Below, piece by piece: positions 16,514 through 30,863 of a DNA stretch of 64,000 bases. The notes under the pieces are model-generated. The model made no database searches and had not been told where the DNA came from. It was given only the letters and a program-made list of their open reading frames with translations. The position numbers were made by a program, and so were the translations under genes. The DNA is taken from positions 245,757-309,756 of IMG/VR virus record IMGVR_UViG_3300042473_001540. One strand, given 5' to 3'. Numbering within the stretch: position 1 is the stretch's first letter; each line of letters begins with the position of its first letter.

Positions 16514-16521
16514 GGGGAAAA

Positions 16522-16746
16522 GTGACCATCAACCGCAAGGCGTTTCAAACACCACAGAAAACTTGGCATGCAGTCAAGTGGACTCGCAAGGGGCGAGGAT
16601 CCTACACTGATTTCGAAGCGGCCAAAAGGTGGTGCAACGCTCATGCTGGAGTCTACAGAGGTGACTGGTGTTACCATTATGGCCCTTGGGAATTCAAGTT
16701 TCGCGACCCCGCTATAGCCTTGATGTTTCAACTTACATGGTGCTAG
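16522..16746 (+). CDS. small protein of the F....(D)A..F.L.W paralog family
   Basis: C-terminus FKFRDPAIALMFQLTWC. Confidence 0.65.
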   Translation: MTINRKAFQTPQKTWHAVKWTRKGRGSYTDFEAAKRWCNAHAGVYRGDWCYHYGPWEFKFRDPAIALMFQLTWC

Positions 16747-16747
16747 T

Positions 16748-17002
16748 ATGAAATGGGAATGGACTCTGTCCGTAGTTGCTGAGCGTGATGCCTCAGGCAA
16801 GCGTCGTCGACTTGAGGAGCATGAGACAGCCGTGGAGGTGCAAGATGGTGGACAGGCACAGCTTGTGGAGTTTGCAAACACCAGTGAGACCGGGCTGTTT
16901 GTGCGCTTGCAGAGCTGGGATGATCAGCGCGAGCATACCGAAATGGCTCAGTTGCTGAACAAGCGAGTGCGAGTCACTGTGGAGGTGCTGGACGATGAAT
17001 GA
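16748..17002 (+). CDS. hypothetical protein
   Basis: ORF packed between neighbours. Confidence 0.6.
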   Translation: MKWEWTLSVVAERDASGKRRRLEEHETAVEVQDGGQAQLVEFANTSETGLFVRLQSWDDQREHTEMAQLLNKRVRVTVEVLDDE

Positions 17003-17309
17003 AGTTTCAAAGATGATTTGTGTGGGCATGATCCTGGCTTCAAAAAAGCGCAAGCCTGACAGCTTGTTTGTGGTCACGCATCTCTATCAGCGAGAGTACG
17101 CCAATGGTAATCTCGCTGATAGAGCAACAGGATTGATAATTAGCAAAAAGCGTGACCCTGAACCTTGGCTCGAAACTCGGGCTCACGGTGCTCCCCCTCC
17201 GGGGATTGATGGGAGTGAGCTCCGCGACCTAGATGTTAGAAGTCTCGAGCAGATGTTTCCCCATGTGTGGTTTGATCCAGTTGTGCCAGAGCATGAGGAA
17301 GACAAGTGA
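16995..17309 (+). CDS. hypothetical protein
   Basis: Overlaps upstream stop; GGAGG RBS. Confidence 0.6.
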   Translation: MNEVSKMICVGMILASKKRKPDSLFVVTHLYQREYANGNLADRATGLIISKKRDPEPWLETRAHGAPPPGIDGSELRDLDVRSLEQMFPHVWFDPVVPEHEEDK

Positions 17310-17373
17310 ATTTTTCTGGTTGACAATCTTCTCTAGGCTGCTACAATGGCGGGGCAAGCAAGGAGCTAGAGCG

Positions 17374-17529
17374 ATGGACGACCTCAGCAAACTGATTGGG
17401 CGCACTGTAGCCAAAGCCGAAATGTTTGGAGACGGTTATTTCCGGCTCACGTTTGAGGACGGAAGCGAGCTGGATGTGATGGCGCACGGCACTGAGCCGC
17501 AGTGGTTGAGTGTTGACTTCACCGATTGA
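17374..17529 (+). CDS. small protein, paralog of 19124-19285
   Basis: LIGRTV..FGDGYFRLTFEDGSEL..WLSVD; promoter 17320-17347. Confidence 0.7.
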   Translation: MDDLSKLIGRTVAKAEMFGDGYFRLTFEDGSELDVMAHGTEPQWLSVDFTD

Positions 17530-17579
17530 CAGAGCAGTAGCCTTCAGCTAGTATGCGCTACCAAAAGAGGAGTTGTGCT

Positions 17580-17888
17580 ATGCAGTTTGTTGTTATTGAT
17601 CTCAAGACTCGCTGCCTGGTGAAGCATCCGCGCACTCGGAAGGAAACCTACAGCACTGAGCGTGCTGCCAAAGCGGCGAAGACCCGCTTGACCAAAATTG
17701 ATATGGACGCCTATCTCGCAGGCAAAAAGTATCCTCGCTCCGACTATGAGGTTATGGACGAGGCAACATACAAGGCACAGGTGCCCATGCGGGAGGTCAC
17801 TAATCTTATGACGGGAGCCACCGTGCTCGAGCGTGCTGACACACCGTGGCACTGTTCAGTCGGTAGTGAGAGTTACTGGAGCAGCTGA
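17580..17888 (+). CDS. hypothetical protein
   Basis: GAGGAG RBS; promoter 17526-17554. Confidence 0.7.
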   Translation: MQFVVIDLKTRCLVKHPRTRKETYSTERAAKAAKTRLTKIDMDAYLAGKKYPRSDYEVMDEATYKAQVPMREVTNLMTGATVLERADTPWHCSVGSESYWSS

Positions 17889-17889
17889 C

Positions 17890-18207
17890 GTGAGTAAACT
17901 GGTGACAGATGGTCATGTGGCTGTGCTCTACAGCCCAGGTTTTGGATCATGTTGGTATGACCCCAGCTTTCCCTCCTGCCTAACTGATCCCGCAGTAGTA
18001 GATTGGGTGATGGCGGGAAAACCCAAAAGCCAATTGAGAGAAATTATAACCTATCTCGCTCTAGCTTACGGTGAGGAATTCGGGATTGGCGGGTTGGATC
18101 AGCTCGCAGTCTCATGGATCCCTGAGGGCACACGGTTTGTGGTGCATGACTATGATGGCAGCGAATATATCTTGCGAGAAGATAAAATGCCGTGGAGTGT
18201 GGCATAA
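17890..18207 (+). CDS. conserved-type phage hypothetical protein
   Basis: VAVLYSPGFGSCW..WIPEGTRFVVHDYDGSE pattern. Confidence 0.7.
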   Translation: MSKLVTDGHVAVLYSPGFGSCWYDPSFPSCLTDPAVVDWVMAGKPKSQLREIITYLALAYGEEFGIGGLDQLAVSWIPEGTRFVVHDYDGSEYILREDKMPWSVA

Positions 18208-18301
18208 TCCAGAAAAAACTGGTTGACTGAAACCAAAACTTTGCTAATATGTGAGCACGCAAGCAGCAGGGGCTGGTTGCACAACAGGAAAGAAGGTTAC
18301 A

Positions 18302-18532
18302 ATGGGTATCAGCACTGAACTGGCTCGGAAGATCCTCTCGGACGAGATCGACATCTATGATGCGGTGGCATATGGTGAAGGCTGCACCAACGAGGAGCAT
18401 AACTACCTGCAGAACATGTATGACGAGATTGCTGCTGAGCACTTCCTGCATCGGGACGATGCCTCTGAAGAGATCATGGAACGCATCTACGATTGCATTT
18501 ATGACGACTTTGGCGAGGAGGCTGTGGCGTAA
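18302..18532 (+). CDS. highly acidic small protein
   Basis: 21 D/E versus 4 K/R in 76 aa (hand count); promoter 18223-18250. Confidence 0.7.
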   Translation: MGISTELARKILSDEIDIYDAVAYGEGCTNEEHNYLQNMYDEIAAEHFLHRDDASEEIMERIYDCIYDDFGEEAVA

Positions 18533-18576
18533 CAGCCACACCCACCACAGCAACAAGCAGAACTGAGGTACCAAAA

Positions 18577-18858
18577 ATGAACACGCAAACTTCTGTTTCC
18601 GAATGCCTCCAGGAAGCTGACGAGGTGATCCAGAGCCTGAAGGAAGCAGGCTATGACTACAGCCACAAGCGTGCCGAGATTGCTCTGCTGTTTGATACTC
18701 AGCTCTACAACGGCAACTGGGACTGCACCACGGACTTTGACGATGGTACCCCGGACCTCCGATTGATCCAGGAGGACGAGTATGACCAGCACATGGATGA
18801 TGAGGACAAGCCTGACTCAGTCACCTATGCTGCCGGGCACTATGTGATGCTGGCCTAG
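18577..18858 (+). CDS. highly acidic small protein
   Basis: 22 D/E versus 5 K/R in 93 aa (hand count); GAGGT RBS. Confidence 0.7.
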   Translation: MNTQTSVSECLQEADEVIQSLKEAGYDYSHKRAEIALLFDTQLYNGNWDCTTDFDDGTPDLRLIQEDEYDQHMDDEDKPDSVTYAAGHYVMLA

Positions 18859-18868
18859 GAACACAAAA

Positions 18869-19111
18869 ATGATAGCCACCATCACACTTTGGACCATGCT
18901 GCTGTGGGCCGAATCTCGAGCATCCAGCAGTTCCTTGGAATCTACCCAGATAAATGGGTTTGCGACCCAAGAGGCGTGTTTGACCGCCCTGGCACAAATC
19001 ACCGGGATCAACAAGCGTCTCCAAAATGAGAGAGGGAGTGCAAGGTCAGGCGAGACTGGTGTGGACTTCAAGCTGACGATGTGCATTCCTGTCGAAACTC
19101 CCAAGAGTTGA
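18869..19111 (+). CDS. small protein with hydrophobic N-terminus
   Basis: AGGA RBS; two Cys. Confidence 0.55.
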   Translation: MIATITLWTMLLWAESRASSSSLESTQINGFATQEACLTALAQITGINKRLQNERGSARSGETGVDFKLTMCIPVETPKS

Positions 19112-19123
19112 TGGAGACAGCAA

Positions 19124-19285
19124 ATGTGGGACGAAGAGCTTAGGAAGTTTGTGGGTCGCACTGTGGAGAGCATCACTCGCTATGGTGATGAGTATCTCGA
19201 GATTCGCTTTGATGATGGCACCTGTCTCACTGTGGGCTCTCGGGGCAGTGAGGAAAGTTGGCTGGATGTAGATTCTTTGGGTTGA
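19124..19285 (+). CDS. small protein (53 aa, not in ORF track), paralog of 17374-17529
   Basis: FVGRTV..YGDEYLEIRFDDGTCL..WLDVD; GGAG RBS. Confidence 0.7.
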   Translation: MWDEELRKFVGRTVESITRYGDEYLEIRFDDGTCLTVGSRGSEESWLDVDSLG

Positions 19286-19336
19286 CCCCTGCTCAAACCC
19301 TGCTATAGTGTGGTTGCAAGAGAGGAGACCGCAGAC

Positions 19337-19588
19337 ATGATGAGGGCTGTGAAAGCGTTGATGGGCTGGCGTAAGGTGGTTAATGACAGCCTTACAGATG
19401 TGTCGTTTGGGTCAAACGGTGGAGGCGAGTGGATGGCACAGGAACTGCTCTCCATGTCAGACGCTGACCGTATCGCCCTTGCTGCCGAACTGCTGGCAGG
19501 GACGGGATACGAGACCCGGCGTACGGAGCGTGCAGGCTCTGATGTGGCGGATTTTTTGCTGTGCGGCGCTTCAATGAAGAGGGAGTAG
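19337..19588 (+). CDS. hypothetical protein
   Basis: GAGGAG RBS; promoter 19282-19309. Confidence 0.6.
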   Translation: MMRAVKALMGWRKVVNDSLTDVSFGSNGGGEWMAQELLSMSDADRIALAAELLAGTGYETRRTERAGSDVADFLLCGASMKRE

Positions 19589-19593
19589 TAGAG

Positions 19594-19845
19594 ATGAACC
19601 TCAGCAAGCTCAAAGTGATCCAGACCACATATGCGCTAGAGCGTGAGGACTACGTGTATCGCATTACAGTGGACGAGGATGGTTGGGTCATCATCAAGAG
19701 GACTGACTCCCAGCATCCCATGTGGACGCATGGGGCTCTCACCCAGGCTTATGACGCGGTCTGTGAAAAGTTTGTGGTGATGATCCGTGTGGAAAACATG
19801 CGTCTCCGTCCCGATGAGGCTGAAAAAGTGCTTGCAGGGCTTTGA
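19594..19845 (+). CDS. hypothetical protein
   Basis: GGGAG RBS. Confidence 0.6.
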   Translation: MNLSKLKVIQTTYALEREDYVYRITVDEDGWVIIKRTDSQHPMWTHGALTQAYDAVCEKFVVMIRVENMRLRPDEAEKVLAGL

Positions 19846-19887
19846 AGCTGGTGCTATATTGAGTTTGCACAACAGGGACACGGTGAT

Positions 19888-20319
19888 ATGGCCTACATGA
19901 ACCAAACTCGCAAGAATGAGATCACTCCTGCTGTGAAGCGTGTGCTGAGCAAGTATAAGATCAAGGGCACGCTGAGTGTGCGCAATCACAGCACCTTGGT
20001 GCTGAGCATCAAATCCGGCAGCATTGATTTCTGCCAGAATTGGTATGACAAGTGGACTGCCGAACATGCGCGCCGCCCCACTGCACATCAGCCCACAGAG
20101 GTTCCGGACCACATTGATGTGAATGTGCATCACATTGGGAGCCACTTTTCCGGACGTGCAGAAAAGTGCCTCCAGGAGTTGCTGAACGCTATGAACGAAG
20201 GCAACTGGAACCGGAGCGATGTCCAGACCGATTATTTTGACCGTGGATGGCACGTTTCAATGGGCATTGGTCGTTGGAACAAGCCCTACGTTTTTGAGAA
20301 GGTTAGCAAAGGTGTTTGA
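19888..20319 (+). CDS. conserved phage early protein with SD.QTDYFD motif (LPD29-like, tentative)
   Basis: NWNRSDVQTDYFDRGWHVSMGIGRWNKPY. Confidence 0.5.
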   Translation: MAYMNQTRKNEITPAVKRVLSKYKIKGTLSVRNHSTLVLSIKSGSIDFCQNWYDKWTAEHARRPTAHQPTEVPDHIDVNVHHIGSHFSGRAEKCLQELLNAMNEGNWNRSDVQTDYFDRGWHVSMGIGRWNKPYVFEKVSKGV

Positions 20320-20545
20320 AAAGCGTCTATGGCTGGTCAAACTCAGCTTTAGAGATGATCGTCAGAGAGAGTTGGGCACTAGTGAGTTCTCAGTGATGGC
20401 TCGAACTCATTGGGGTGCTCAGAGAGAAGTACGTCGTCAGGTAGAGATCATGCGACACAGCTATGGCCAGATGTATCCAGGCCAATCAGTGTCGATCTAC
20501 AGCACTGTGAGCCTAGGAGTTGGTGAGTTCATCTGCGTAGCCTAG
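20312..20545 (+). CDS. hypothetical protein
   Basis: GTG start overlapping upstream stop. Confidence 0.5.
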   Translation: MFEKRLWLVKLSFRDDRQRELGTSEFSVMARTHWGAQREVRRQVEIMRHSYGQMYPGQSVSIYSTVSLGVGEFICVA

Positions 20546-20595
20546 TTTGGAAAACATGCGCCTTAACCCTGCATTGCGATAGCGAGGAAACATAC

Positions 20596-20994
20596 ATGAC
20601 TCGAAACGAGTTTGACGGTTACATTCGGCTGGTGTTCAGCAGCGCAAGCAATTGGCGCGGCGAAGACCACATTTGGTGGCCACATGGAACCGATCTCTAC
20701 TACGAGGTCACATGGATCACAGGTGGGATGACAGGGGGCAACTGTTGGGGGGACAGTGCTGAGCACAGTGTGAGCAGTGAGCCTGAGCCCTCTCTTGAAC
20801 TGCTGGATCAATTCTTGGATGAGGTGTGCCCAGATCTCACTGCTCGGCAGTATCGCCGGCTACTTGCAGAGGTTCCTTATCGAGACAGCTACACTGACTA
20901 CGAGTATTATGGCAACCACACCACACGTGGCAAGAAGGTTGTATCCTTCAAGGACCTCTACAAGTGGTTGTGCCAGGAAGTTTGGAAGTGCTGA
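20596..20994 (+). CDS. hypothetical protein
   Basis: GAGGA RBS. Confidence 0.7.
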   Translation: MTRNEFDGYIRLVFSSASNWRGEDHIWWPHGTDLYYEVTWITGGMTGGNCWGDSAEHSVSSEPEPSLELLDQFLDEVCPDLTARQYRRLLAEVPYRDSYTDYEYYGNHTTRGKKVVSFKDLYKWLCQEVWKC

Positions 20995-21395
20995 TTACCT
21001 GTATCGCTGGCCTGCCCGGCAGTGGCAAAACCCATCTCATGGACAAGATTAGCGACCAATACCCACCGCTCAGAGCATGGGCGGTAGATGACATAACCGA
21101 GCTGGGGCAGTTGCCAGGAGTGCATGCTGTATTCCATCTTGACCATCTCATTATCGCCGATCCTCACTTCTGTAGAGAGAGCACCAGGGTACGTGCAGAG
21201 ACTTTGCTGACGGGTTGGTATAACCGGCCCATAGAATGGATCTTTTTTGAGAACAATCCCCAACGATGCCGCGAGAACGTGCACTGTAGGAACGATCAAC
21301 GGAGGGTGTTGGGGATGATCCACATCCTAAGTCAACTCTATACCATTCCAGCAGGGGCTGATGTGCGGCCAGTATATTGTCGCATAGACTCATAA
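20988..21395 (+). CDS. small P-loop NTPase/kinase (AAA_33-like)
   Basis: IAGLPGSGKT Walker A; LIIAD Walker B-like. Confidence 0.7.
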   Translation: MLITCIAGLPGSGKTHLMDKISDQYPPLRAWAVDDITELGQLPGVHAVFHLDHLIIADPHFCRESTRVRAETLLTGWYNRPIEWIFFENNPQRCRENVHCRNDQRRVLGMIHILSQLYTIPAGADVRPVYCRIDS

Positions 21396-21447
21396 TTTTT
21401 AGGTCTTGATCAAGACTCCTGCTATACTCAAGGCAGGAGAAACATGA

Positions 21448-22389
21448 ATGAAGAAAATACTTGTAACTGGTGGGGCTGGGTTTTTGGGCAGCCACTTGTG
21501 TGAAAGACTTGTGGCCCGAGGACACCATGTGCTGTGTGTGGACAACTATTTTACTGGATCAAAATCCAACATACAGCATTTGTTAAGCAGTTCCAATTTT
21601 GAGGTCATACGTCATGACGTCTGTGTGCCCTTATATGTGGAGGTAGATGAAATCTATAATCTTGCCTGTCCTGCAAGTCCCAAAAGTTATCAAAAAGATC
21701 CTATTCAAACCATGAAAACCAGTTTTATGGGATCTTATAATCTATTAGGCTTGGCCAAACGCACAAAAGCAAAGATCTTTCAAGCCAGCACTAGCGAAAT
21801 TTATGGCGATCCTTTTGTTCATCCGCAACCAGAATCCTACTGGGGCAATGTAAATCCTCTGGGCCCGCGTGCCTGTTACGATGAAGGCAAACGTGCTGCT
21901 GAAACACTTTTTATGGACTATAACCGGCAACACAATGTTGACGTTCGGGTGGCTAGGATCTTCAACACCTACGGACCGCGCATGAGTGTTGATGATGGGA
22001 GAGTAGTTAGTAATTTTATTGTGCAGGCGTTACAAGGGCTGCCTTTGAGTGTGTATGGTGAAGGCACCCAAACACGTAGCTTCTGTTATGTTGATGACCT
22101 AATTGATGGCATTTTGACATTGATGGAGTCCACATCTTCTGGCTCACAACCTGTGAATTTAGGCAATCCTCATGAGGTAACAGTCAGGAGCCTTGCAGAG
22201 CAAATCCAACGCCTCACAGGGTCCACTAGCCGGATTTTAAATTTACCGTTGCCTGTAGATGATCCACAACAGCGTCAAGCTGATATTACTAGAGCAACAA
22301 GCATACTGGGTTGGGAGCCAAAAATCCCTCTTGAGCAAGGACTACAAAAAACTATAGCCTATTTCCAACAGGTGCTGACCAATGCCTAA
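21448..22389 (+). CDS. uxs: UDP-glucuronate decarboxylase (UDP-xylose synthase), extended SDR
   Basis: [55 protein letters not shown]. Confidence 0.92.
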
Positions 22390-23017
22390 GGTAACAACCG
22401 CAGTTTTTATCAGTGGACGAGGCAGCAATCTCTTGAGCCTTCTCAAGGCACAAAATGATTCCCATTGCCCCTTTCAAATTCAATTGGTGGTTAGTAACAA
22501 TGAGGATGCGGGCGGATTGAAACTAGCACAAGATCATGGCGTGCAATGGGCAATCTTTCCCAACAGTGCGTACAAAAAAGATAGGGAAGGTCAAGAGGGG
22601 GCTATTCACCAACTTTTGGTGGAACAAAAGATTGAGCTAGTTGCGCTGGCTGGCTACATGCGGGTTTTGACTCCGTGGTTTGTTGCACAATGGAGTCAAC
22701 GAATTATCAATATTCATCCCAGCTTGTTGCCCAAATATCCTGGATTACACACTCACCAAAGGGCTTTGGCAGCAGGGGATCAAGAACACGGTTGCACGGT
22801 ACACTATGTTACAAAAGTGTTGGATGCTGGTCCTATTATCCTACAAGCCAAGGTTCCTGTAGAGCCTGGAGATACAGAATCTGATTTGAGTCTTAGGGTA
22901 TTGGTGCAAGAACACCTAATCTATCCCCAGGCATTGTCCTTGGTTTCCCAGCAACTCTGCGACAAAAAAATAGTGGGAGAAAAAGGCATTTCGCTGGAAA
23001 AACCGGTAGACAGCTGA
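22382..23017 (+). CDS. purN: phosphoribosylglycinamide formyltransferase
   Basis: [40 protein letters not shown]. Confidence 0.95.
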
Positions 23018-23069
23018 GATGGTGATGCTATTATGCGGTTGTAGGCAACGAAACAGAGGATGCTACACG

Positions 23070-23552
23070 ATGAACACCAAGCAGTTCAACATCATTGGTA
23101 TTAGCCGCTTCCAGGGCGTGCTGACCTTCCGCGTTAGCAACGGCAGCATCAAGCACCGTGAGACTGTGCTGGCACGCGAAGGGCACACTGAGGTGCAGTT
23201 CAAGACCCTCCCGCAGCCCATGACCAAGGCTGATGCTGTGGCTTGGATGCGCAGCCAGGGCGTGGACGCTGTGGTGCCGGCCAAGAATCTCAAGAAGAAG
23301 ATTGAGGCCATCTTGGCTGCTGAGCGGGAAGCTGCTGCTCAGAAGGCTGCCAAGGATTGGGCCGAGATGCAGACCAACAGCATGAGCAAGCTGGCTGCCA
23401 AGCGGGCCCGGGACGCTGCTCGCAAGCGGGAGAAGCGTGCTGCTGAGCGTGCGGCTCAAGAGGCTGCTAAGCAGCAGGGCATCAACCAGCTGATGGGGGC
23501 GGTTGACCAGGAGTTTGGGGTGGATGTGGAGCGTGAGCTGGCGGGGGAGTAA
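23070..23552 (+). CDS. hypothetical protein with basic Ala-rich helical C-terminus
   Basis: GAGGA RBS; promoter 23007-23034; strongly C/G-ending codons. Confidence 0.75.
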   Translation: MNTKQFNIIGISRFQGVLTFRVSNGSIKHRETVLAREGHTEVQFKTLPQPMTKADAVAWMRSQGVDAVVPAKNLKKKIEAILAAEREAAAQKAAKDWAEMQTNSMSKLAAKRARDAARKREKRAAERAAQEAAKQQGINQLMGAVDQEFGVDVERELAGE

Positions 23553-23566
23553 GCAGAGGAATATGG

Positions 23567-23655
23567 AACTGGTGGGGTGACGAACCCGTAAACCCAGTTT
23601 GACACCAAGAAAGCGGCTGGTGGGGTGATGAACCCGTAAACCCAGCCGCTTTCTT
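23567..23655. repeat. two tandem copies of 29-nt motif CTGGTGGGGTGAYGAACCCGTAAACCCAG, each closing a hairpin
   Basis: Copies 23569-23597 and 23617-23645, one mismatch; different outer stems (AACTGG/CCAGTT; AAGAAAGCGGCTGG/CCAGCCGCTTTCTT). Confidence 0.9.
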
Positions 23656-23660
23656 GTGAG

Positions 23661-23666
23661 TAAATA
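23661..23666 (+). promoter_or_regulatory. T4-type late promoter core TAAATA
   Basis: Upstream of ParB-like gene. Confidence 0.6.
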
Positions 23667-23690
23667 GGGGAACAAACAAAGGATGGGTCA

Positions 23691-24092
23691 GTGAGAGCAA
23701 GTGATTTTTTGTCGCCAAAAATTCAGTTAACTGAAAGCATAACTGGTAGCGAAATGCTGACTCTCTACAAAAGCATGCATCACGAAGAGCCCACTAATCC
23801 TGCTATGGTCAACTGGATCAAAAGTCAAGACTGGGGCATAAAAATGATCAACCCGCAAGACTTTCCAGATCACTATGGTGATGTGCTGCCAGATGATCCT
23901 TTTAATCGGGTAATTGATATTGACGATGAGATTGTGAAAAAGCTAACCATCAAACTAGAGCGTGGAGAGCAAGTGGACCCTGTGATTATGGGACCAAATG
24001 GCAGTGTTGTTGACGGCAACCACCGAGCGCAAGCTGCCAAGGAGGCTAGTGTAAGCATCTTGGCATATGTTCCCATGGGGCAAACTGTTTGA
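23691..24092 (+). CDS. ParB/Sulfiredoxin-like domain protein, candidate virion-packaged
   Basis: VDPVIM..VVDGNHRAQAA; N-terminus MRASDF..LTE. Confidence 0.7.
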   Translation: MRASDFLSPKIQLTESITGSEMLTLYKSMHHEEPTNPAMVNWIKSQDWGIKMINPQDFPDHYGDVLPDDPFNRVIDIDDEIVKKLTIKLERGEQVDPVIMGPNGSVVDGNHRAQAAKEASVSILAYVPMGQTV

Positions 24093-24123
24093 CGCAAGCT
24101 TGATAAGATCGCATACTTGACCC

Positions 24124-25122
24124 ATGAGCACATATCAAGAAGCTGGCGTTAACATAACTGCTGGAGAAGAGTTTGTTGACCAAATAAGGCCCTTGGCCCA
24201 ATCCACACACCGAAAGGGCGTGTTGGGCACAATAGGCGGCTTTGGCGCAGTGTTTGACATCGGCAGCTTGGGCATGCGTGACCCCCTGCTGGTTAGCACA
24301 ACTGATGGCGTGGGAACAAAGCTGTCACTTGTCAAAGAGGCAGGCACACGCCTTCAAGGCTTGGGGCAAGACCTAGTTGCTATGTGTGTGAATGATCTTG
24401 TGACAACAGGTGCAACGCCACTTTATTTCTTGGACTATCTGGCTGTGAACAAGCTGGATCCCTCTACGCATGTTGATATCATAGAGGGCATTGCAGAAGC
24501 TTGCAGAACATCTGGTTGTGCACTAGTGGGCGGTGAAACAGCAGAAATGCCAGGAGTCTACAGCCCAGGCGATTTTGATTTGGCTGGATTCGCTGTGGGT
24601 GCTGTAGAGCGCAACAGGCTGCTTCCTAAAAATGTTTCTGTAGGTGATGCAGTAATTGCTCTGCCCAGCAGCGGAGTGCACAGCAATGGGTTCAGCCTCG
24701 TGAGGAAAATCCTTCACGACAGTGGCACAAGTCTTGATGCGCTTGTGCCTTGGGACCTTACAAAAACTTTTGGTCAAGTGTTATCTACTCCCACTGCCCT
24801 TTATGTCAGCACAATTTTGGAACTGCACACAAAAGGCCTACTTACGGCTGCTGCACACATCACTGGTGGAGGCCTGTATAGCAATCTCAAGCGTGTGTTG
24901 CCAAGTGATCTTGATTTTGAAAAAACCAGAGGTTGTCCGGTGCCTGAAGTATTTCGTTGGCTACAAACCGCAGGGCATGTCTCAGACACTGAAATGCACT
25001 CTGTGTTCAATATGGGCGTGGGCATGTGTTTGATCTCCAACCAACCCAGCAAAGTAGTTGAGCTGTTGTGGGCGCAAGATCAAGCCTGTTACCTTATTGG
25101 GCATGTAATCAATAAGCGATGA
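24124..25122 (+). CDS. purM: phosphoribosylformylglycinamidine cyclo-ligase (AIR synthetase)
   Basis: YQEAGV, GGFG, DGVGTK, CVNDL, GGETAEMPG, SSGVHSNGFSL, HITGGG. Confidence 0.95.
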   Translation: MSTYQEAGVNITAGEEFVDQIRPLAQSTHRKGVLGTIGGFGAVFDIGSLGMRDPLLVSTTDGVGTKLSLVKEAGTRLQGLGQDLVAMCVNDLVTTGATPLYFLDYLAVNKLDPSTHVDIIEGIAEACRTSGCALVGGETAEMPGVYSPGDFDLAGFAVGAVERNRLLPKNVSVGDAVIALPSSGVHSNGFSLVRKILHDSGTSLDALVPWDLTKTFGQVLSTPTALYVSTILELHTKGLLTAAAHITGGGLYSNLKRVLPSDLDFEKTRGCPVPEVFRWLQTAGHVSDTEMHSVFNMGVGMCLISNQPSKVVELLWAQDQACYLIGHVINKR

Positions 25123-25316
25123 AGTATCGTGTGGAGATTTGGGAGGCAGTGCGTGGTTTAGAGCCCACTCTTATTCACGTATTGCTGTTCAACACCTTAG
25201 ATGACGCCCTTACAAGAGCTAGATCCACTACCTTAGCCAACACCTTGCCTTTGGCTCCTGATTGGTACTCATTCAGTAAGGGACCATATGTTCAAACCGA
25301 AAGCATTACAATATGA
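25119..25316 (+). CDS. small hypothetical protein
   Basis: ATGA overlaps at both ends. Confidence 0.6.
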   Translation: MKYRVEIWEAVRGLEPTLIHVLLFNTLDDALTRARSTTLANTLPLAPDWYSFSKGPYVQTESITI

Positions 25317-26212
25317 CCCTTCCTCACTTGCTGAGCATTGATCAGTTTGACCTCACAAGTATACACACATTATTCACAACTGTGAAAGGCATTGAACTGG
25401 GCCTCACCCAACCAGTAGCTCAAGGGAAGGTATGTACTAACCTCTTCTACGAGCCCAGCACACGCACCAGCAGTAGTTTTTATTCAGCCATGGTGCGGCT
25501 AGGTGGCGCTGTCATCCCCATCAATGATGTCAGCTTCAGCTCTGTCAGCAAGGGTGAGAACCTAGAAGACACTATTCGCACTTTGGCCAGCTATTCAGAC
25601 TGCATTGTGTTGCGCCATCCCGAAAAAGGGGCAGCTCAATGGGCTGCGGCTGTAAGTCCTGTTCCTATCATCAATGCAGGCGATGGAGTTGGTGAGCATC
25701 CCACACAAGCTCTCCTAGACCTCTATACCATCCAGCGGCATGTGGGCTTGACTCGTCCCATTGACGTGTGCCTAATGGGTGACTTGCGTCATGGTCGAAC
25801 TGTGCACAGCCTCACCAGGTTACTGCGTCTATATGATGTGAGACTGCACATGGTGAGTCCACCAGGTCTGGAGATGCCGCAAGAACTCACAGAGGAAACA
25901 GACAAGCTTTACACCAGCATTGACGAATGTGTGGACAAGGTGGATGTGATCTATGTTACCCGTGTGCAGAAGGAGCGGATTGCGCCGAATCTACAAAGCA
26001 CGATGGGCAAGTATCAGCTCACTCCTCAGCACATGAGCCAGGCCAAGAGCAGCAGCATCATCATGCACCCTTTGCCGCGTGTTGACGAGCTGCCCAGCAG
26101 CTTGGACAGTGATCCCCGGGCCGTGTACTTCAAGCAGATGCGCTATGGTCTCTATGTGCGTCAAGCTATCTTTCTCCACATGTTCAGTGACAGCGTGCCT
26201 TGGAAGTTTTAG
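25313..26212 (+). CDS. pyrB: aspartate carbamoyltransferase catalytic subunit
   Basis: FYEPSTRT, SKGENLEDT, INAGDG.GEHPTQALLD, HPLPR. Confidence 0.96.
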   Translation: MTLPHLLSIDQFDLTSIHTLFTTVKGIELGLTQPVAQGKVCTNLFYEPSTRTSSSFYSAMVRLGGAVIPINDVSFSSVSKGENLEDTIRTLASYSDCIVLRHPEKGAAQWAAAVSPVPIINAGDGVGEHPTQALLDLYTIQRHVGLTRPIDVCLMGDLRHGRTVHSLTRLLRLYDVRLHMVSPPGLEMPQELTEETDKLYTSIDECVDKVDVIYVTRVQKERIAPNLQSTMGKYQLTPQHMSQAKSSSIIMHPLPRVDELPSSLDSDPRAVYFKQMRYGLYVRQAIFLHMFSDSVPWKF

Positions 26213-26267
26213 GTTGACATCTAAACACTTCTCTGTATAGTGCGCTTGAATCCGCAAAGAGGCAACT

Positions 26268-26615
26268 ATGTTTGGCTTCATGAAAAGTTGGTTTACTCAG
26301 CCGTCTCTGTCCGTCAGATCCGCCCAGGATCTCAGCTACTTAGAGCTAATTGAAGAACTGCGAACCAGGGATGATATTGAAATCTTTGCCCGCTTGCGGT
26401 TTCGAGATCAGTGGGTGAAGAATTTTCACGAGAAAAATCCTGGTGCAAAAGTTCCAAGTGGTTTCCTCATGAGGTTTGGTGCACTGGACAGAGTGGCCTC
26501 AGAACGCATGCTGAAACTGATGAACGAACTCAGAGTCATGCGTGAGCTACCAGAAATCAGCCATGAAAAGCTGGAGAAGCACCTTGCGGGCTCCTATCCA
26601 AAGAGCATGCGATGA
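26268..26615 (+). CDS. hypothetical protein
   Basis: GAGG RBS; promoter 26214-26241. Confidence 0.65.
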   Translation: MFGFMKSWFTQPSLSVRSAQDLSYLELIEELRTRDDIEIFARLRFRDQWVKNFHEKNPGAKVPSGFLMRFGALDRVASERMLKLMNELRVMRELPEISHEKLEKHLAGSYPKSMR

Positions 26616-26788
26616 ACCAATTGATCGAGTTGAGTTTTTTCCTGCCCGAAATGGTTCTTTTTGGGGCAGGGCTATACACTTGGTATCATCTTTTCACCTC
26701 CATTGGAAAGTGGAGCTGGAAGCGAGTGGCTCTATACCTCTACGGTGCAGCTTGTGTCTACAGCCTTTGGATCATGGGTTACCAATAG
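26612..26788 (+). CDS. small membrane protein (58 aa, not in ORF track)
   Basis: MNQLIELSFFLPEMVLFGAGLYTW..; ATGA overlap. Confidence 0.55.
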   Translation: MNQLIELSFFLPEMVLFGAGLYTWYHLFTSIGKWSWKRVALYLYGAACVYSLWIMGYQ

Positions 26789-26846
26789 CTGGTTGACATG
26801 CCATCAAAAGCTGCTATATTGGCGGGGTAGAGCACGGAGACAGTAG

Positions 26847-27569
26847 ATGAGCAACTGGAAGGTAGAACCTGCTGCACCGCACACGGTGGAAGGCATGATC
26901 TGCTCTCTTGCAGGCGTGTGCGACGGTGCAAGGCAGCATGACCAACAAGGGTTTTCTGGTGCAGACACTGAGTTTGGCCACAGCTTGGCCAATCGTGCTC
27001 AGCAAGGTAGGCCCTTCACGCTGAAGCAAGCGCAGGCTGCATTGAAGCTCGTGAACAAATACCGCCGACAAATTGGTGGGACGGACTTTGTGAAAGCGTT
27101 CCTGGAACAGCCAGTGTTCAAGCTTGCACCGCTGGATCCCAACGCAGCAGTTGGCAACCTCGAAGGCAGGCATCACAATCCGCGGCGTATCATCAGCGAA
27201 CAGAAGACTGCGGTGTTCCACTTCCCTTACAATCCGGACTTGGTGGCTGCGCTGAAGATGGTCCGAGGCGAGCACAAGGGCGAAAAGTATCGGGCACAGT
27301 GGGAGCCCTCCCGCAAGGTTTGGTTGTGCCCTGTGAACGAAAGCAGCATCTGGAGCATCATGGATGTTGCAGATAAGTTTGAGTTTGAGGTGGAAGATCG
27401 TTTCACCACTTACTTGGAGCGTGTGCGAGAAAAGACGGAAGAAAGTCGAGTTCATCTCATGCTGACAGGCGGCCAGCATGTGACATTGGCAGGCGACACA
27501 CTGATTGTGTCGGTTGACGACGCTGCCATTCTCAAGGAGATCGAAGATGAGCTCAACACTGACGCCTGA
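26847..27569 (+). CDS. N-terminal module of HARP/SMARCAL1-like helicase (CDGA domain plus HARP domain)
   Basis: CDGA..D..GF..D..FG.SLA..KQ..KY motif; FHFPYNPDLVAALK..AQWEPSRKVW HARP-like; promoter 26793-26820. Confidence 0.55.
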   Translation: MSNWKVEPAAPHTVEGMICSLAGVCDGARQHDQQGFSGADTEFGHSLANRAQQGRPFTLKQAQAALKLVNKYRRQIGGTDFVKAFLEQPVFKLAPLDPNAAVGNLEGRHHNPRRIISEQKTAVFHFPYNPDLVAALKMVRGEHKGEKYRAQWEPSRKVWLCPVNESSIWSIMDVADKFEFEVEDRFTTYLERVREKTEESRVHLMLTGGQHVTLAGDTLIVSVDDAAILKEIEDELNTDA

Positions 27570-27828
27570 TTGGATTGACAGAGACCTACTGGCAGAGGCA
27601 TTTCGAGAGATGCCTACCCCACATGGTGCCACCTTCGACGATGGCCGCCGCTGGTGTGGACGGTGTGAGAAGCCTGTGCTCACATGTGAGGCAGTGGTTG
27701 GGGATGGTTGGGCTGACAAGATCTGTCAGCGTTGCACCAGCATCTGGCCCGAGTTCAGCGACCTCTACCAGCTGCAACTGCTGATGGCGGATGAGGATGA
27801 AGATTATTTTCCGGATACTATGCATTGA
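27547..27828 (+). CDS. small Cys-rich (Zn-binding) protein
   Basis: CGRC, CQRC; AAGGAG RBS. Confidence 0.6.
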   Translation: MSSTLTPDWIDRDLLAEAFREMPTPHGATFDDGRRWCGRCEKPVLTCEAVVGDGWADKICQRCTSIWPEFSDLYQLQLLMADEDEDYFPDTMH

Positions 27829-28106
27829 CGCTGACAGCTCTAGACCAAATTCAATTCCCTCTCAATCTGCTCAAAACCCGTGACGCTGATCAGTGGCCCT
27901 ATATGATTGAGGTTTTAGACGTGCCCAATATTACTTTGAAAAGAAACCAAACACTGGGGCTACAGCTTTTTGGCACTCCTGATGCAGAGAGTTGCAGCAG
28001 CCGATGGTCATGGCATGCCATCAGCATCCATAATTTCTCATGTGTGAGGTTTTGGTTCCGGTCCAAGGATGACTTGACACAATTTGCGTTGATGATGGAA
28101 AGGTAG
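27825..28106 (+). CDS. F....D...F.L paralog family protein
   Basis: C-terminus FWFRSKDDLTQFALMM. Confidence 0.6.
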   Translation: MTLTALDQIQFPLNLLKTRDADQWPYMIEVLDVPNITLKRNQTLGLQLFGTPDAESCSSRWSWHAISIHNFSCVRFWFRSKDDLTQFALMMER

Positions 28107-28109
28107 AAT

Positions 28110-28481
28110 ATGGGTATCGAAGATCTCAAGGGCATCACTCTGCTCAACATTGAGCTTGAACGCGAGCCAGACCAGCTCATGTTTTACAGCGAGTGCGGGC
28201 GTAGGTGGCGAATGTGGCACTGTCAAGACTGCTGTGAGAATGTTGTCCTCCAAGACATCATTGGCGAGCTAAGTGACCTCGTTGGTGCGCCTATTCTTGT
28301 GGCTGAGGAGCGTGTGAATGGAAGCGAGACTGAATGGGGGCACGAGACCTGGACATTTTCCGAACTAGCTACCATCAAGGGCAGCGTGACACTGAGATGG
28401 CTGGGTGAGAGCAACGGCTACTACAGCGAAGCAGTGGATTTTGAACAGTTGATGAGTGTAGAGGAGAGTCTCCGAGCATGA
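28110..28481 (+). CDS. conserved phage protein (CCE.V / GESNGYYSE family)
   Basis: QDCCENV, TWTF, WLGESNGYYSE. Confidence 0.75.
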   Translation: MGIEDLKGITLLNIELEREPDQLMFYSECGRRWRMWHCQDCCENVVLQDIIGELSDLVGAPILVAEERVNGSETEWGHETWTFSELATIKGSVTLRWLGESNGYYSEAVDFEQLMSVEESLRA

Positions 28482-28675
28482 GCAGCTACCTAGTGATCCG
28501 TCAAGACGACAACGGTGTGTGCACAATTTTGGCCGACAAGCTCAGTGAGCACGAAAGCCGGCGCTTGGTTGAGATGATGACCAAGCGTGGACACAAGGCC
28601 ACTTACTTTGCCCAACTATATCTCAACCCTCATCAGCGCCAGCAGATTCTCATCACTCATCATGTGAATCTCTAG
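28478..28675 (+). CDS. small hypothetical protein
   Basis: YLVIRQDDNG..GHKATYF; ATGA overlap. Confidence 0.65.
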   Translation: MSSYLVIRQDDNGVCTILADKLSEHESRRLVEMMTKRGHKATYFAQLYLNPHQRQQILITHHVNL

Positions 28676-28735
28676 ATTTAGGATTGACCATCCCTTCAAA
28701 CCTGCTACAATGCAGGGGTAGGAAGGAGAGCTTAC

Positions 28736-30343
28736 ATGTTGACTGTTCCAGCCTCGATTGAGAATGCTCGCAAGGTGCTGCGACTCAGCACCAAGCACAA
28801 CCTCAAGGTTGATCCCCGAGTTGAAGCTTTCTTGAACAGCATCCCTCGGGTCACCCAGCTGGAAGGTTTCAACTTCAAGCTGAAGCCTTACCAGGCAGAG
28901 GCTGTTGCGTGGTTGGAGAGCCAGCTGGGAGTTGGACTGTTGGCTGAAGAACAGGGACTGGGAAAGACCGTTGAGGTTATGGCCTACGCCCACAAGAATC
29001 AGCTGTTTCCTATGATGGTAGTGCTGCCCAATACTCTTAAGTTGAATTGGCGGAATGAAATCATCGCGATGACTGGCACTCGGTACCAAATCAATGTGGT
29101 GGGCACTTCCTACAGCAAGCGTGCCACTGCTGAGCGAGCTGCTCGGCATCCCAATGTCATCTACAGCAAGCGGCCCACAGCCGGTTGCGACATCTACCTT
29201 GTGAACTACGACATCCTCAGTAGCAACCTCGACGACATCGAGGCATTGAATCTCAAGTTCATGGCGGTGGATGAGAGCCACAAGATCAAGAATCCCAGTG
29301 CCAAGCGCACACAGGCTTACATGCGGCTAGCTACTGGTGAGGTGGAGGAAAAGCTCAAGGGCGGTGTGCGCAAGACTCACAAGGTCAGCAAGCCTGTGCC
29401 GCGTGTGGTTCTGATTTCAGGCACTCCAATGGTAAACAGGCCGGCAGAGCTGTGGAGCACTGTCAGGAGCTTGGCCAGCTATGTGCCGCAGTTCAGCACT
29501 TGGAACAAGTTCGCATGGCGCTTCTGCAACCCGGTGAATAACGGGCATGGTTGGAACTTCGGTGGCAGCTCGAACATGGATGAACTGCACCAGCTGCTGA
29601 CAAGCCACCTCATGCTGCGTCGCTTGAAGCGGGACGTGCTGAAGGAGCTGCCGCCCAAGGTGTATCAGGTTATCCCACTGGAGTTTGACCGTGCGGAGTA
29701 TGACAGCGTAGAGCGAGCCTTCAAGGGAATTGATTGGAAAGCTGGCCTTGAGACTATGATCCGCTTGGGCAGCAATGCTCCCAAGAGCGATGAGCGCATT
29801 GTTGCGATGCAGAAGCTGCGTGAGGTGGCTGCGCTCAGCAAGCTCGCCAGCACTGTAGAGTGGATTCGAGATTATACTGAAAACGGCGAGAAGCTGGTGG
29901 TGTTTGCCCACAACCGGGCGGTGATTGACCATATCCAAGGTGCGCTAGCTGCGGACCAGGAGTGGGGCGGAAAGGTTGGAGTTATCTACGGTGGGGTCAG
30001 CAACGAAGAGCGTGCACAGGCTGTTGAGGCTTTTCAGAATGATCCCAAGACCCGAGTGATTTTGGTTAGCATCTCTGCTGGTGGTTTTGGCCTTACCCTT
30101 ACGGCTGCAAATGCGGTGGCGTTTGTGCAGACGCCGTGGAGCCCTGGAGAAATTCAGCAGTGTGCAGACCGTGTGCACCGCATTGGTCAAACTAGCGACC
30201 AGGTTACGATTTTCAACTTGGTGGCTGAAAATACTATCGAAGAGATGATGGCAGACATGCTGTTCAGCAAGGGGCAGGTGCTGGATGCGGGATTGGATGG
30301 TGGGGCTGTGGTGAACACAGTGGACTTGCGTGCAGCGGGTTAA
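28736..30343 (+). CDS. SNF2-family helicase/ATPase (HARP/SMARCAL1-like catalytic part)
   Basis: KPYQ, LAEEQGLGKT, DESH, SGTPMVNRP, RRLKRDV, QCADRVHRIGQ; own promoter 28684-28711. Confidence 0.92.
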   Translation: MLTVPASIENARKVLRLSTKHNLKVDPRVEAFLNSIPRVTQLEGFNFKLKPYQAEAVAWLESQLGVGLLAEEQGLGKTVEVMAYAHKNQLFPMMVVLPNTLKLNWRNEIIAMTGTRYQINVVGTSYSKRATAERAARHPNVIYSKRPTAGCDIYLVNYDILSSNLDDIEALNLKFMAVDESHKIKNPSAKRTQAYMRLATGEVEEKLKGGVRKTHKVSKPVPRVVLISGTPMVNRPAELWSTVRSLASYVPQFSTWNKFAWRFCNPVNNGHGWNFGGSSNMDELHQLLTSHLMLRRLKRDVLKELPPKVYQVIPLEFDRAEYDSVERAFKGIDWKAGLETMIRLGSNAPKSDERIVAMQKLREVAALSKLASTVEWIRDYTENGEKLVVFAHNRAVIDHIQGALAADQEWGGKVGVIYGGVSNEERAQAVEAFQNDPKTRVILVSISAGGFGLTLTAANAVAFVQTPWSPGEIQQCADRVHRIGQTSDQVTIFNLVAENTIEEMMADMLFSKGQVLDAGLDGGAVVNTVDLRAAG

Positions 30344-30578
30344 CCGGGATCTGGAAGCGGACTACAGCCAGTGGCACGAGGTGCCTATTGAGGCAGACAA
30401 CCCAGTGCCTTTGCCCCATCTTTTGGACGTGTTGGGCGAGCTGCGATGGAGTTGGCTGAAGAAGACACCTGGAGGCAGCTACTGGCTCCAGTGGCACAGT
30501 GGGGTCAACCCCAAACGATATCAACTGGTGTTTGAGCGTGAAGAAGATGCTCTGCTGTTCAGGTTGACGTGGACCTAG
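30330..30578 (+). CDS. F....DA..F.L.W paralog family protein
   Basis: C-terminus VFEREEDALLFRLTWT. Confidence 0.65.
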   Translation: MQRVNRDLEADYSQWHEVPIEADNPVPLPHLLDVLGELRWSWLKKTPGGSYWLQWHSGVNPKRYQLVFEREEDALLFRLTWT

Positions 30579-30581
30579 CGC

Positions 30582-30824
30582 ATGTATGAGACCACAGTCT
30601 TGCCTCAATGGCCACATATGGTAGTGCTGGAAGGCATGTCTCTTGCTGAGCACGAAAACATGCTGCTGTGGTTGATAGATACCTTGGGCCAACCGGACTT
30701 TTTCAAAGCAAGTAGCCGATGGAGCTATCGTTCTCTGTCATCTCACCAACATTATGAAAAAATTTGGGTGAGCTTTCGGAGCCAAGAGGATGCCAGCTTG
30801 TTTGCCCTCTTGTGGGGAAGGTAG
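30582..30824 (+). CDS. F....DA..F.L.W paralog family protein
   Basis: C-terminus SFRSQEDASLFALLWGR. Confidence 0.7.
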   Translation: MYETTVLPQWPHMVVLEGMSLAEHENMLLWLIDTLGQPDFFKASSRWSYRSLSSHQHYEKIWVSFRSQEDASLFALLWGR

Positions 30825-30863
30825 CATATTGACAACCTTTGGGGTTTCTGATACGCTTTAAGT

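What the first reader, a model, noticed from the sequence alone, without database searches (positions are those of the whole stretch)
23567..23655. Tandemly duplicated 29-nt hairpin motif with conserved loop and different outer stems
Two copies (23569-97, 23617-45; period 48; one C/T difference) of CTGGTGGGGTGAYGAACCCGTAAACCCAG. Each closes with a different outer stem (6 bp and 14 bp), so the core is held constant while the closing stem varies. That pattern is typical of a protein-binding RNA or ssDNA element. It lies between an early gene and the TAAATA promoter of the ParB/Srx-like gene. The inner GGGT-GAYGA-ACCC loop has a box-C-like GUGAUGA in copy 2.
Basis: seen in the sequence. Interest (0 to 1): 0.62.

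Follow-up and report, generated by a model that had tools for sequence, protein, structure and literature searches.

The report
Conserved twin hairpin ending early gene
Two near-identical RNA hairpins sit directly after an early gene of an uncultured giant phage and are kept in every close relative; they most likely end or stabilise that gene's transcript and give an unidentified factor a fixed docking site.

Summary
Two copies of a 29-nt motif lie at 23569-23597 and 23617-23645, and they are the only copies in the 309,756-bp phage record. The pair follows the stop codon of a 160-aa early gene (23070-23552) that has its own sigma70-like promoter.

Nine related lineages, sharing 59-100% protein identity in that gene, all carry the same two-hairpin unit at the same place. 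More distant homologues have one plain GC-rich hairpin there instead. Covariation supports both hairpins: 9 pairs show compensatory changes, and no shuffle reached the observed score. G-U pairs fall almost only on the + strand, so this is an RNA in the gene's 3' UTR.

The lower stem of hairpin 2 evolves freely in sequence and resembles this genome's ordinary terminators. Its 29-nt apex is 98% identical across lineages, unpaired bases included, against 60% at four-fold sites. Hairpin 1 is a looser copy.

Best reading: a terminator or 3'-end hairpin pair whose apex is a sequence-specific recognition module. The binder is unknown, and the neighbouring protein's invariant arginine-rich helix is only a candidate. 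There is no match to Rfam, box C/D, CRISPR, REP or IS605. No expression data could be obtained.

The parts
23007..23034 (+). sigma70-like early promoter of the upstream gene (TAGACA, 16 nt, TATTAT with TG)
   Evidence: Consensus scan. The same -35, spacer and extended -10 are conserved in the 8 lineages whose upstream sequence is held. It matches the genome-wide early promoter consensus.
23070..23552 (+). 160-aa early gene (P0001). It has an N-terminal beta-beta-alpha-beta-alpha domain and a long helix with an invariant basic stretch. The element is its 3' UTR.
   Evidence: Translation; family alignment A2; AF2 model. No Pfam, PDB or GenBank-phage match.
23566..23600 (+). Hairpin 1: motif copy 1 (core 23569-23597) closed by 6 pairs plus a G-U. 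This is the looser, evolving copy.
   Evidence: Covariation at pairs 2-28 and 6/7-19 and in the closing pairs. Mean core identity 0.79.
23598..23605 (+). Short linker between the hairpins. It is U-rich at its start and poorly conserved.
   Evidence: Alignment A1. Spacer identity 0.60.
23606..23656 (+). Hairpin 2: a 15-bp lower stem of the A-rich/GC/U-rich terminator type, capped by motif copy 2 (core 23617-23645, nearly invariant).
   Evidence: -32.3 kcal/mol, z -7.1. The lower stem covaries in sequence and length across lineages. Core identity is 0.979 and unpaired positions 0.983, against 0.595 at four-fold sites. Other terminators of this genome have similar stems.
23661..23666 (+). TAAATA box in front of the next gene. 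It marks the start of the next expression unit. Promoter status is untested.
   Evidence: Conserved upstream of the 133-aa gene in lineages A, C, D and E, and in B after an inserted gene. TAAATA is not enriched genome-wide.
23691..24092 (+). It is a neighbour, not part of the element.
   Evidence: Translation. No Pfam or PHROG hit. Separated from the element by an inserted convergent gene in lineages B and F.

Best explanation
The two hairpins are a structured RNA in the 3' UTR of the early gene 23070-23552, transcribed from that gene's own sigma70-type promoter. Hairpin 2 is the unit's terminator or 3'-end-protecting hairpin. Its lower stem is an ordinary A-rich/GC/U-rich terminator stem that is free to change sequence as long as it pairs. 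Its 29-nt apex is a sequence-specific recognition module. That apex has either a GUGAUGAA apical loop with a UAAAC bulge, or, in the other register, a GAYGA pentaloop with a 2x6 internal loop. Hairpin 1 is a duplicated, more weakly constrained second copy of the module. An unidentified trans-acting factor, probably a protein, binds the modules and tunes termination, read-through or mRNA stability. Shown: the structure, the strand, the position, the conservation pattern and the clade-wide presence. Inferred: the terminator or stabiliser role and the existence of a binder.
For: The structure is real. RNAalifold and pair counts on nine lineages give 9 pairs with compensatory changes, and 0 of 500 shuffles reach the covariation score. 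Slid controls score far lower. The strand is +: 14 G-U cells against 2 A-C cells. Position: the element begins 6-14 nt after the stop codon in every lineage with 59% or more protein identity. What follows is a new promoter-like box, the end of a convergent gene, or a sigma70 promoter. Homologues below 50% identity carry a single GC-rich hairpin at the same place; in L024-L026 it is followed by a T-run, in L098-L101 it is not. The hairpin-2 lower stem resembles other terminators of this genome. Sequence constraint beyond structure: hairpin-2 core identity is 0.979 and its unpaired bases 0.983, against 0.595 at four-fold sites, 0.755 for the coding sequence and 0.58 for its own lower stem. UAA is invariant in all 18 hairpins. 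Each record holds exactly two copies.
Against: Expression, 3' ends and strand are therefore inferred from sequence only. The U-tract after hairpin 2 is moderate in A, B, F, G and H and poor in C, D and E, so efficient intrinsic termination is not assured. No binder was identified: the record has no RNase III, RegA or RegB hit. The RegA and RegB controls found those families in no genome, so their absence is uninformative. The nine lineages include three close pairs (C/E, F/F2, G/H), so there are about six independent lineages. The hairpin-2 core never varies in its stems, so its own fold is supported only through hairpin 1 and through thermodynamics.
Confidence: 0.5

Rival explanations
1. A plain tandem intrinsic terminator with no specific binder. 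On this reading the core conservation reflects only folding kinetics or stability of a long hairpin, or chance retention.
For: Terminator position. Distant homologues have simple hairpins at the same place. The lower stem is of the genome's terminator type. In lineages B and F the element lies between convergent genes, as bidirectional terminators do.
Against: Unpaired bases of hairpin 2 are 98% identical while neutral sites are 60% identical and the pairing lower stem 58%. A terminator does not need fixed loop and bulge bases. UAA is kept in hairpin 1 even where its apical loop was replaced.
Confidence: 0.2
2. An N- or Nun-like system. The invariant arginine-rich helix of the upstream protein binds the hairpins on its own nascent transcript and makes RNA polymerase resist, or obey, the hairpin-2 terminator.
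For: In one register the apex is a 4-bp stem closed by U-A with a GA(N)GA pentaloop whose third base is the only freely varying loop base (C, U, G). That pattern matches the P22 boxB GACAA loop, in which the third base is looped out of a GNRA-like fold (PMC12550061). The protein family's most conserved part is a basic helix, with 15 invariant columns mostly in it. The gene and the element are always adjacent.
Against: No boxA-like conserved linear motif lies near the hairpins. The protein has no Pfam hit to any antiterminator family. Distant homologues keep the basic helix but lack the motif. Downstream genes have their own promoter-like boxes, or are convergent, which argues against programmed read-through. 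The loop register is ambiguous. The third loop base is U in all nine hairpin-2 copies.
Confidence: 0.12
3. A 3'-UTR-derived small RNA or a ribonuclease processing and stability signal. The hairpins would be cut from or retained on the mRNA, and the conserved loops would act as a seed or cleavage determinant.
For: About 100 nt with two hairpins, the second terminator-like, is a typical small-RNA architecture. The conserved single-stranded bases could be a seed. T7 early mRNAs carry conserved RNase III hairpins with internal loops (from general knowledge).
Against: No conserved promoter lies between the stop codon and hairpin 1 (6-14 nt). No target was found. No phage RNase III was found. Hairpin 1 is too short for a classical RNase III site. 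There are no expression data.
Confidence: 0.08
4. A DNA-level site, for example a binding site for the neighbouring DGNHR-motif protein, an origin, or a recombination or homing target, read as double-stranded or single-stranded DNA.
For: The hairpin-2 core is invariant in stems as well as loops, as a protein-read DNA site would be. Mobile-looking genes are inserted just downstream in lineages B and F and in L098.
Against: Compensatory changes and 14 G-U against 2 A-C cells indicate a folded single strand of + polarity. The element stays with the upstream gene when the DGNHR-motif gene is displaced or absent.
Confidence: 0.05
5. A mobile or borrowed repeat: a CRISPR-repeat mimic or mini-array, a REP/PATE or IS200/IS605 end, or a translated mini-ORF (GUG AUG AAC CCG UAA) inside the loop.
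For: The unit is 29 nt with a stem and an A-rich 3' tail, loosely like type I-E repeats (from memory). There are two direct copies. The loop contains an in-frame start and stop.
Against: There are only two copies per phage record. An exact-pattern scan of 185,579 species genomes found no arrays or multi-copy families. The 19-nt 'spacer' pairs with the downstream flank. No Y1 transposase or TnpB was found. Hairpin 1 of lineages C, D and E has no start codon yet keeps UAA.
Confidence: 0.03

Closest known systems
Rho-independent terminators closing autonomous phage gene cassettes (promoter, gene, terminator; 'moron' layout)
   Same: A sigma70-like promoter, one gene, then a strong GC-rich hairpin with A-rich 5' and U-rich 3' flanks right after the stop codon. 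Distant homologues have a plain terminator-like hairpin at the same place.
   Different: The hairpin apex is a 29-nt, sequence-invariant structured module that is duplicated as a second upstream hairpin. The U-tract is weak in several lineages. Ordinary terminators do not conserve loop and bulge bases.
Lambdoid nut boxB hairpins bound by arginine-rich N (or HK022 Nun) peptides
   Same: A small hairpin in an early transcript. The possible U-A-closed GA(N)GA pentaloop has a variable third base, as in P22 boxB GACAA (PMC12550061). The adjacent gene encodes a protein whose invariant part is an Arg/Lys-rich helix.
   Different: No boxA. No homology to N, Nun or Q families. The hairpin sits inside a larger hairpin with a conserved UAA-containing bulge. 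There are two copies in tandem. They lie after the gene and not between the promoter and the terminators to be overridden. Binding is untested.
Bulged-hairpin sites for arginine-rich peptides (HIV/BIV TAR with Tat type) and phage operator hairpins (MS2, PP7)
   Same: In the alternative register the module is a continuous helix with a conserved 5-nt bulge four pairs below a conserved apical loop. This is the general architecture of such protein sites.
   Different: No sequence relation. No protein partner shown. The comparison is architectural only and comes from general knowledge.
Guanidine-II (mini-ykkC) riboswitch: two tandem look-alike hairpins
   Same: Two small, similar hairpins in tandem with a variable linker. 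The window's copy 1 loop contains ACGA.
   Different: The conserved copy (hairpin 2) has AUGA, not ACGR. The loops are penta- or octaloops, not tetraloops. It lies in a 3' UTR, not a 5' UTR. No Rfam hit even at E<=10.
Box C/D K-turn RNAs
   Same: The heptamer GUGAUGA occurs in copy 2.
   Different: No box D, no tandem G-A pairs and no three-base bulge geometry. The window's copy 1 has GUGACGA. Rfam C/D models give only chance-level hits.

Membership tests
Intrinsic (Rho-independent) terminator | Stable GC-rich hairpin immediately downstream of a gene end | tested here: met
   Hairpin 2 folds at -32.3 kcal/mol, z -7.1, and starts 54 nt after the stop codon. Hairpin 1 starts 14 nt after it.
Intrinsic (Rho-independent) terminator | U-tract directly following the stem | tested here: inconclusive
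   In the window the distal 3' arm plus tail is U-rich (the CUUUCUUGUG part). Lineages B, F, G and H have UUUC then AUUUGUG. Lineages C, D and E are U-poor. The consensus terminator scan did not list the site.
Intrinsic (Rho-independent) terminator | Lies at the end of a transcription unit | tested here: met
   A promoter-like site lies upstream of the gene. Downstream there is a new promoter-like box, a convergent gene end or a sigma70 promoter in every lineage. This is inferred from sequence only.
Intrinsic (Rho-independent) terminator | Transcript 3' ends map to the tail | not testable with these tools
Lambdoid nut site (boxA plus boxB with N protein) | boxB: short stem with a GNRA-like pentaloop | tested here: inconclusive
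   GA(N)GA closed by U-A fits the P22-type 'third base out' pattern. The alternative register is nearly as well supported (97.4% vs 100% of cells paired). No 3D evidence.
Lambdoid nut site (boxA plus boxB with N protein) | Conserved linear boxA next to boxB | tested here: not met
   There is no conserved linear motif in the 5' flank or the linker. Spacer identity is 0.60.
Lambdoid nut site (boxA plus boxB with N protein) | N/Nun-family protein encoded by the phage | tested here: not met
   The upstream protein and its 23 homologues give no consistent Pfam hit. The only link is an Arg/Lys-rich helix by composition.
Box C/D (K-turn) RNA | Box C RUGAUGA paired with box D CUGA forming tandem G-A pairs | tested here: not met
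   GUGAUGA occurs in copy 2 only. There is no CUGA in 23553-23670. Rfam C/D hits have E above 2.
CRISPR repeat, mini-array or repeat-mimic RNA | The repeat matches repeats of a CRISPR array, and the spacer has typical length and is unrelated to the flanks | tested here: not met
   The exact-pattern scan of 185,579 species genomes gave only single chance hits in coding DNA. The spacer is 17-19 nt, and its 3' part pairs with the downstream flank.
REP, PATE or IS200/IS605 end hairpins | Multi-copy dispersed family with a Y1 transposase or TnpB partner | tested here: not met
   Two copies per record, at one locus. No PF01797 or PF07282 in the record.
Any curated Rfam family | Match at the gathering score | tested here: not met
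   No match in the whole window. Only chance-level hits at E<=10 on 23500-23720.

The most novel reading that the evidence does not exclude
The upstream early protein and the twin hairpins form a self-contained ribonucleoprotein switch. On this reading the protein's invariant arginine-rich helix docks on the conserved modules of its own transcript's 3' end. It acts like N or Nun on boxB, or Tat on TAR, but at a terminator apex. It thereby sets how much RNA polymerase terminates or reads through into the neighbouring nucleotide-metabolism genes, or how long its own mRNA lives. That would be a new protein family and a new RNA motif for protein-controlled termination in giant phages.
Probability: 0.15. 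Interest if true: 0.7.

Novelty: new variant of a known kind. Interest (0 to 1): 0.45.

Why it matters
Terminator hairpins are usually treated as sequence-free structures. Here a terminator-position hairpin carries an apex that is more conserved than the adjacent protein-coding gene and is duplicated in tandem. That points to a specific regulatory contact in the early programme of an uncultured group of roughly 310-330-kb phages. No isolate, Rfam family or Pfam family covers either the RNA or the neighbouring protein. The element is small (about 90 nt), sharply defined and supported by covariation, so it is easy to test in a reporter or by EMSA. If a binder exists, it would add a new RNA-protein pair to the few known systems of phage transcription and termination control. 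If not, it is a cautionary example of unusually strong constraint on a terminator.

Tried and rejected
1. Dispersed repeat or mobile element. Pattern and covariance-model searches find only the two copies in the record and in two related records.
2. Wider distribution. Three degenerate-pattern scans of viral contigs, one of metagenome contigs and one of species genomes returned, apart from the same phage clade, only chance hits inside coding DNA.
3. Rfam, at gathering and permissive thresholds: nothing.
4. Box C/D, guanidine-II, CRISPR mimic, REP/IS605: defining features not met (see the membership table).
5. Function of the upstream protein: no result from Pfam, PHROGs, PDB sequence search, Foldseek, VIA-align wide, the Atlas or GenBank phages. 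Only weak or uninformative matches came back: long-helix hits at Z about 7, and viral hypothetical look-alikes for the N-domain.
I did not try another route.
7. Phage-encoded RNase III, RegA and RegB: not found. For RegA and RegB the control genomes also gave nothing, so their absence is uninformative.
8. trp-attenuator-like alternative pairing, with the 3' arm of hairpin 1 pairing with the 5' arm of hairpin 2. This is possible for any tandem duplicate. The stop-codon distance of 6-14 nt lets a terminating ribosome reach hairpin 1 only in C, D and E, so I set the idea aside.
9. Loop as a mimic of the gene's own start. AUGAAC, or AUGAGC in G and H, matches in 6 of 8 lineages and mismatches in D and F. 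Not significant.
10. UAA/GAN and 11-nt tetraloop-receptor motifs: the opposite strand lacks the required bases.

Full report
**Observation**

The period is 48 and there is one C/T difference. None of 100 dinucleotide shuffles of the window gave a match.

Copy 1 is closed by six pairs plus a G-U (23566-23600, -12.3 kcal/mol). Copy 2 is closed by a perfect 15-bp stem (23606-23620 with 23642-23656, -32.3 kcal/mol, z = -7.1).

The window is the last 64 kb of a 309,756-bp viral record that is 45.8% G+C and estimated to be 76% complete. The motif occurs nowhere else in that record, by pattern search or by a covariance model built from 18 hairpins. The two known copies score 60.2 and 58.2 bits, and the next best hit scores 14 bits at E 1.6.

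**Context**

The element starts 14 nt after the stop codon of a 160-aa gene (23070-23552, P0001). That gene has a sigma70-like promoter with an extended -10 at 23007-23034. The promoter is conserved almost base for base in the eight lineages whose upstream sequence is held. It matches a very sharp early-promoter consensus found 44 times on the + strand of the record and 12 times on the - strand.

The neighbours are purN, an NAD-dependent epimerase, purM and an OTCase-like gene. The next gene downstream (23691-24092) has a DGNHR motif but no Pfam or PHROG hit. It is preceded by a TAAATA box at 23661-23666.

**Relatives**

I collected related loci in four ways: an exact-pattern scan of viral contigs, a protein-guided scan, a metagenome pattern scan, and a word search for P0001 homologues followed by contig look-ups.

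- Together these gave nine distinguishable lineages, A to H, with P0001 identity from 100% down to 59%.
- Every one carries the same two-hairpin unit directly after the stop codon, at a gap of 6-14 nt.
- Homologues below 50% identity (L024-L026, L098-L101) instead carry one plain GC-rich hairpin at that place. In L024-L026 it is followed by a T-run; in L098-L101 it is not.
- What lies downstream of the element differs. In A, C, D and E it is the DGNHR-motif gene. In B and F it is a convergent 211-218-aa gene inserted before that gene. In G and H it is a sigma70 promoter followed by other genes.

The element therefore travels with the 3' end of P0001 and not with the downstream gene.

**Structure**

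On the nine-lineage alignment A1, RNAalifold predicts both hairpins. Nine pairs keep pairing through changes on both sides.

For the structure I specified, 0 of 500 shuffles reach the observed covariation score or the observed percentage of paired cells. Sliding the 3' partners by 1-3 columns drops pairing from 90% to between 21% and 64%.

The lower stem of hairpin 2 differs in sequence and length between lineages but always pairs. G-U pairs occur in 14 cells on the + strand. A-C, which would be G-U on the - strand, occurs in 2 cells, both in the least certain outer columns. The folded molecule is therefore the + strand, with the same sense as the P0001 mRNA. RNA is the simplest reading. Single-stranded + DNA is not formally excluded.

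The register of the upper helix is ambiguous because of a G-run, and two models fit.
- Model B has a 4-bp stem, a GAYGA pentaloop and a 2x6 internal loop. It pairs 100% of cells.
- Model A has a continuous helix with a 5-nt UAAAC bulge and an 8-nt apical loop. It pairs 97.4% of cells. Its extra pair 5-20 appears as U-G (10 hairpins), U-A (3) and C-G (1).

**Constraint**

| Region | Mean pairwise identity |
|---|---|
| Four-fold degenerate sites of P0001 | 0.595 |
| Whole P0001 coding sequence | 0.755 |
| Linker between the hairpins | 0.60 |
| Lower stem of hairpin 2 | 0.58 |
| Hairpin-1 core | 0.788 |
| Hairpin-2 core | 0.979 |
| Unpaired positions of hairpin 2 | 0.983 |

Only two of the 29 columns of the hairpin-2 core vary at all.

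Hairpin 1 tolerates more change. Its apical loop is replaced by a tetraloop in C, D and E. The third base of its pentaloop is C, U or G. The bulge changes at its flanks. The UAA trinucleotide is nevertheless invariant in all 18 hairpins.

So the lower stems behave like a structure-only element, and the apex behaves like a sequence-read element. The nine lineages include three close pairs, so about six are independent.

**What it most likely is**

Several lines place hairpin 2 at the end of a one-gene early transcription unit:
- its position directly after the gene;
- the plain hairpins at the same place in distant homologues;
- the new promoter or convergent gene that follows it;
- the likeness of its lower stem to other A-rich/GC/U-rich terminators of this genome, for example those near record positions 9901, 197421, 207443 and 258685.

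Hairpin 2 is therefore most likely a terminator or a 3'-end-protecting hairpin. The U-tract is moderate in five lineages and poor in three, so termination may be partial.

The invariant apex and its duplicate are best explained as docking modules for a trans-acting factor. I could not identify that factor.

The nearest candidate is P0001 itself. Its family has a confident small N-terminal domain whose only look-alikes are viral hypothetical proteins, a variable linker, and an invariant Arg/Lys-rich helix. In model B the apex resembles a boxB-type pentaloop with a variable third base, as in P22 boxB, where that base is looped out (PMC12550061). In model A it resembles bulged hairpins read by arginine-rich peptides.

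Against a true N/nut relationship:
- there is no boxA;
- the protein has no hit to a known antiterminator family;
- distant homologues keep the basic helix but lack the motif;
- the downstream arrangements do not favour programmed read-through.

I rate this reading at roughly 0.12-0.15.

**What it is not**

- There is no Rfam match.
- It is not a box C/D RNA. Copy 2 alone has the heptamer, and there is no box D.
- It is not a CRISPR-like or REP/IS605-like repeat. There are two copies per record. No arrays or repeat families turned up in 185,579 species genomes, and the record has no Y1 transposase or TnpB.
- It is not guanidine-II, because the conserved copy lacks ACGR.

**Limits**

Strand, transcript ends and any processing are inferred from sequence. 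No binder was tested. Public collections could be scanned only with exact patterns, so more divergent versions of the element may exist.

**Verdict**

The box-C and TnpB suggestions are not supported, and the link to the ParB-like gene is not supported either.

The element is an undescribed, clade-specific structured RNA at a terminator position. I class it as a new variant of a known kind and give it moderate interest (0.45).

Noticed in passing
window 14737, 15676, 16191, 17320, 23007, 26214, 26793, 28684 (+ strand) and throughout the record: There is a very sharp early-promoter consensus: TTGACA, a 14-nt spacer, then TGCTATAAT, usually preceded by an A-run. It gives 44 regex hits on the + strand of the record against 12 on the - strand. 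In window 14000-33000 there are 30 sigma70-like sites against 15.6 expected.
   Followed up: partly
L021 3575-4231 (-), L094 1447-2082 (-), L098 732-1346 (+): In lineages B and F a 211-218-aa gene of unknown function is inserted convergently between the element and the DGNHR-motif gene. Its stop codon lies about 10 nt from hairpin 2. A more distant relative has an HNH endonuclease gene at the equivalent place. The spot downstream of this early gene looks like an insertion hot spot.
   Followed up: partly
window 23070-23552 and homologues P0004-P0027: This is an uncharacterised phage protein family. It has a confident N-terminal beta-beta-alpha-beta-alpha domain of about 62 aa, a variable Ala/Lys/Glu-rich linker and an invariant basic helix. 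There is no Pfam, PDB or GenBank-phage relative. Only members that carry the twin hairpin have the acidic C-terminal tail ending ERELAGE.
   Followed up: partly
window 23625-23639 versus 23070-23075: The hairpin-2 loop reads as an in-frame GUG AUG AAC CCG UAA, and the upstream gene itself starts AUG AAC. In lineages G and H both read AUG AGC. In D and F the gene starts AUG AGC while the loop keeps AUG AAC. This may be coincidence.
   Followed up: partly
window 40183-42402 (-): One 739-aa ORF combines DUF6267, a cytidylyltransferase-like domain and an Acb1 (anti-CBASS) domain.
   Followed up: no
window 21448-26212: A cluster of metabolic genes lies around the element: NAD-dependent sugar epimerase, purN, purM and an aspartate/ornithine carbamoyltransferase-like gene. 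Further on are an SNF2-type helicase (28736-30343) and a baseplate-hub/lysozyme fusion (32920-35697, -).
   Followed up: no
window 23035-23069: The 5' UTR of the early gene is conserved across lineages and can form a short stem (GUAG with CUAC) that encloses the ribosome-binding site.
   Followed up: no
L096 2577-2600, L021 3562-3585, L094 1434-1457: Lineages B, F and G share about 24 nt directly after hairpin 2, including a small GCCA/UGGC hairpin. In B and F this stretch contains the stop codon of the inserted convergent gene. G keeps the stretch although that gene is absent.
   Followed up: no
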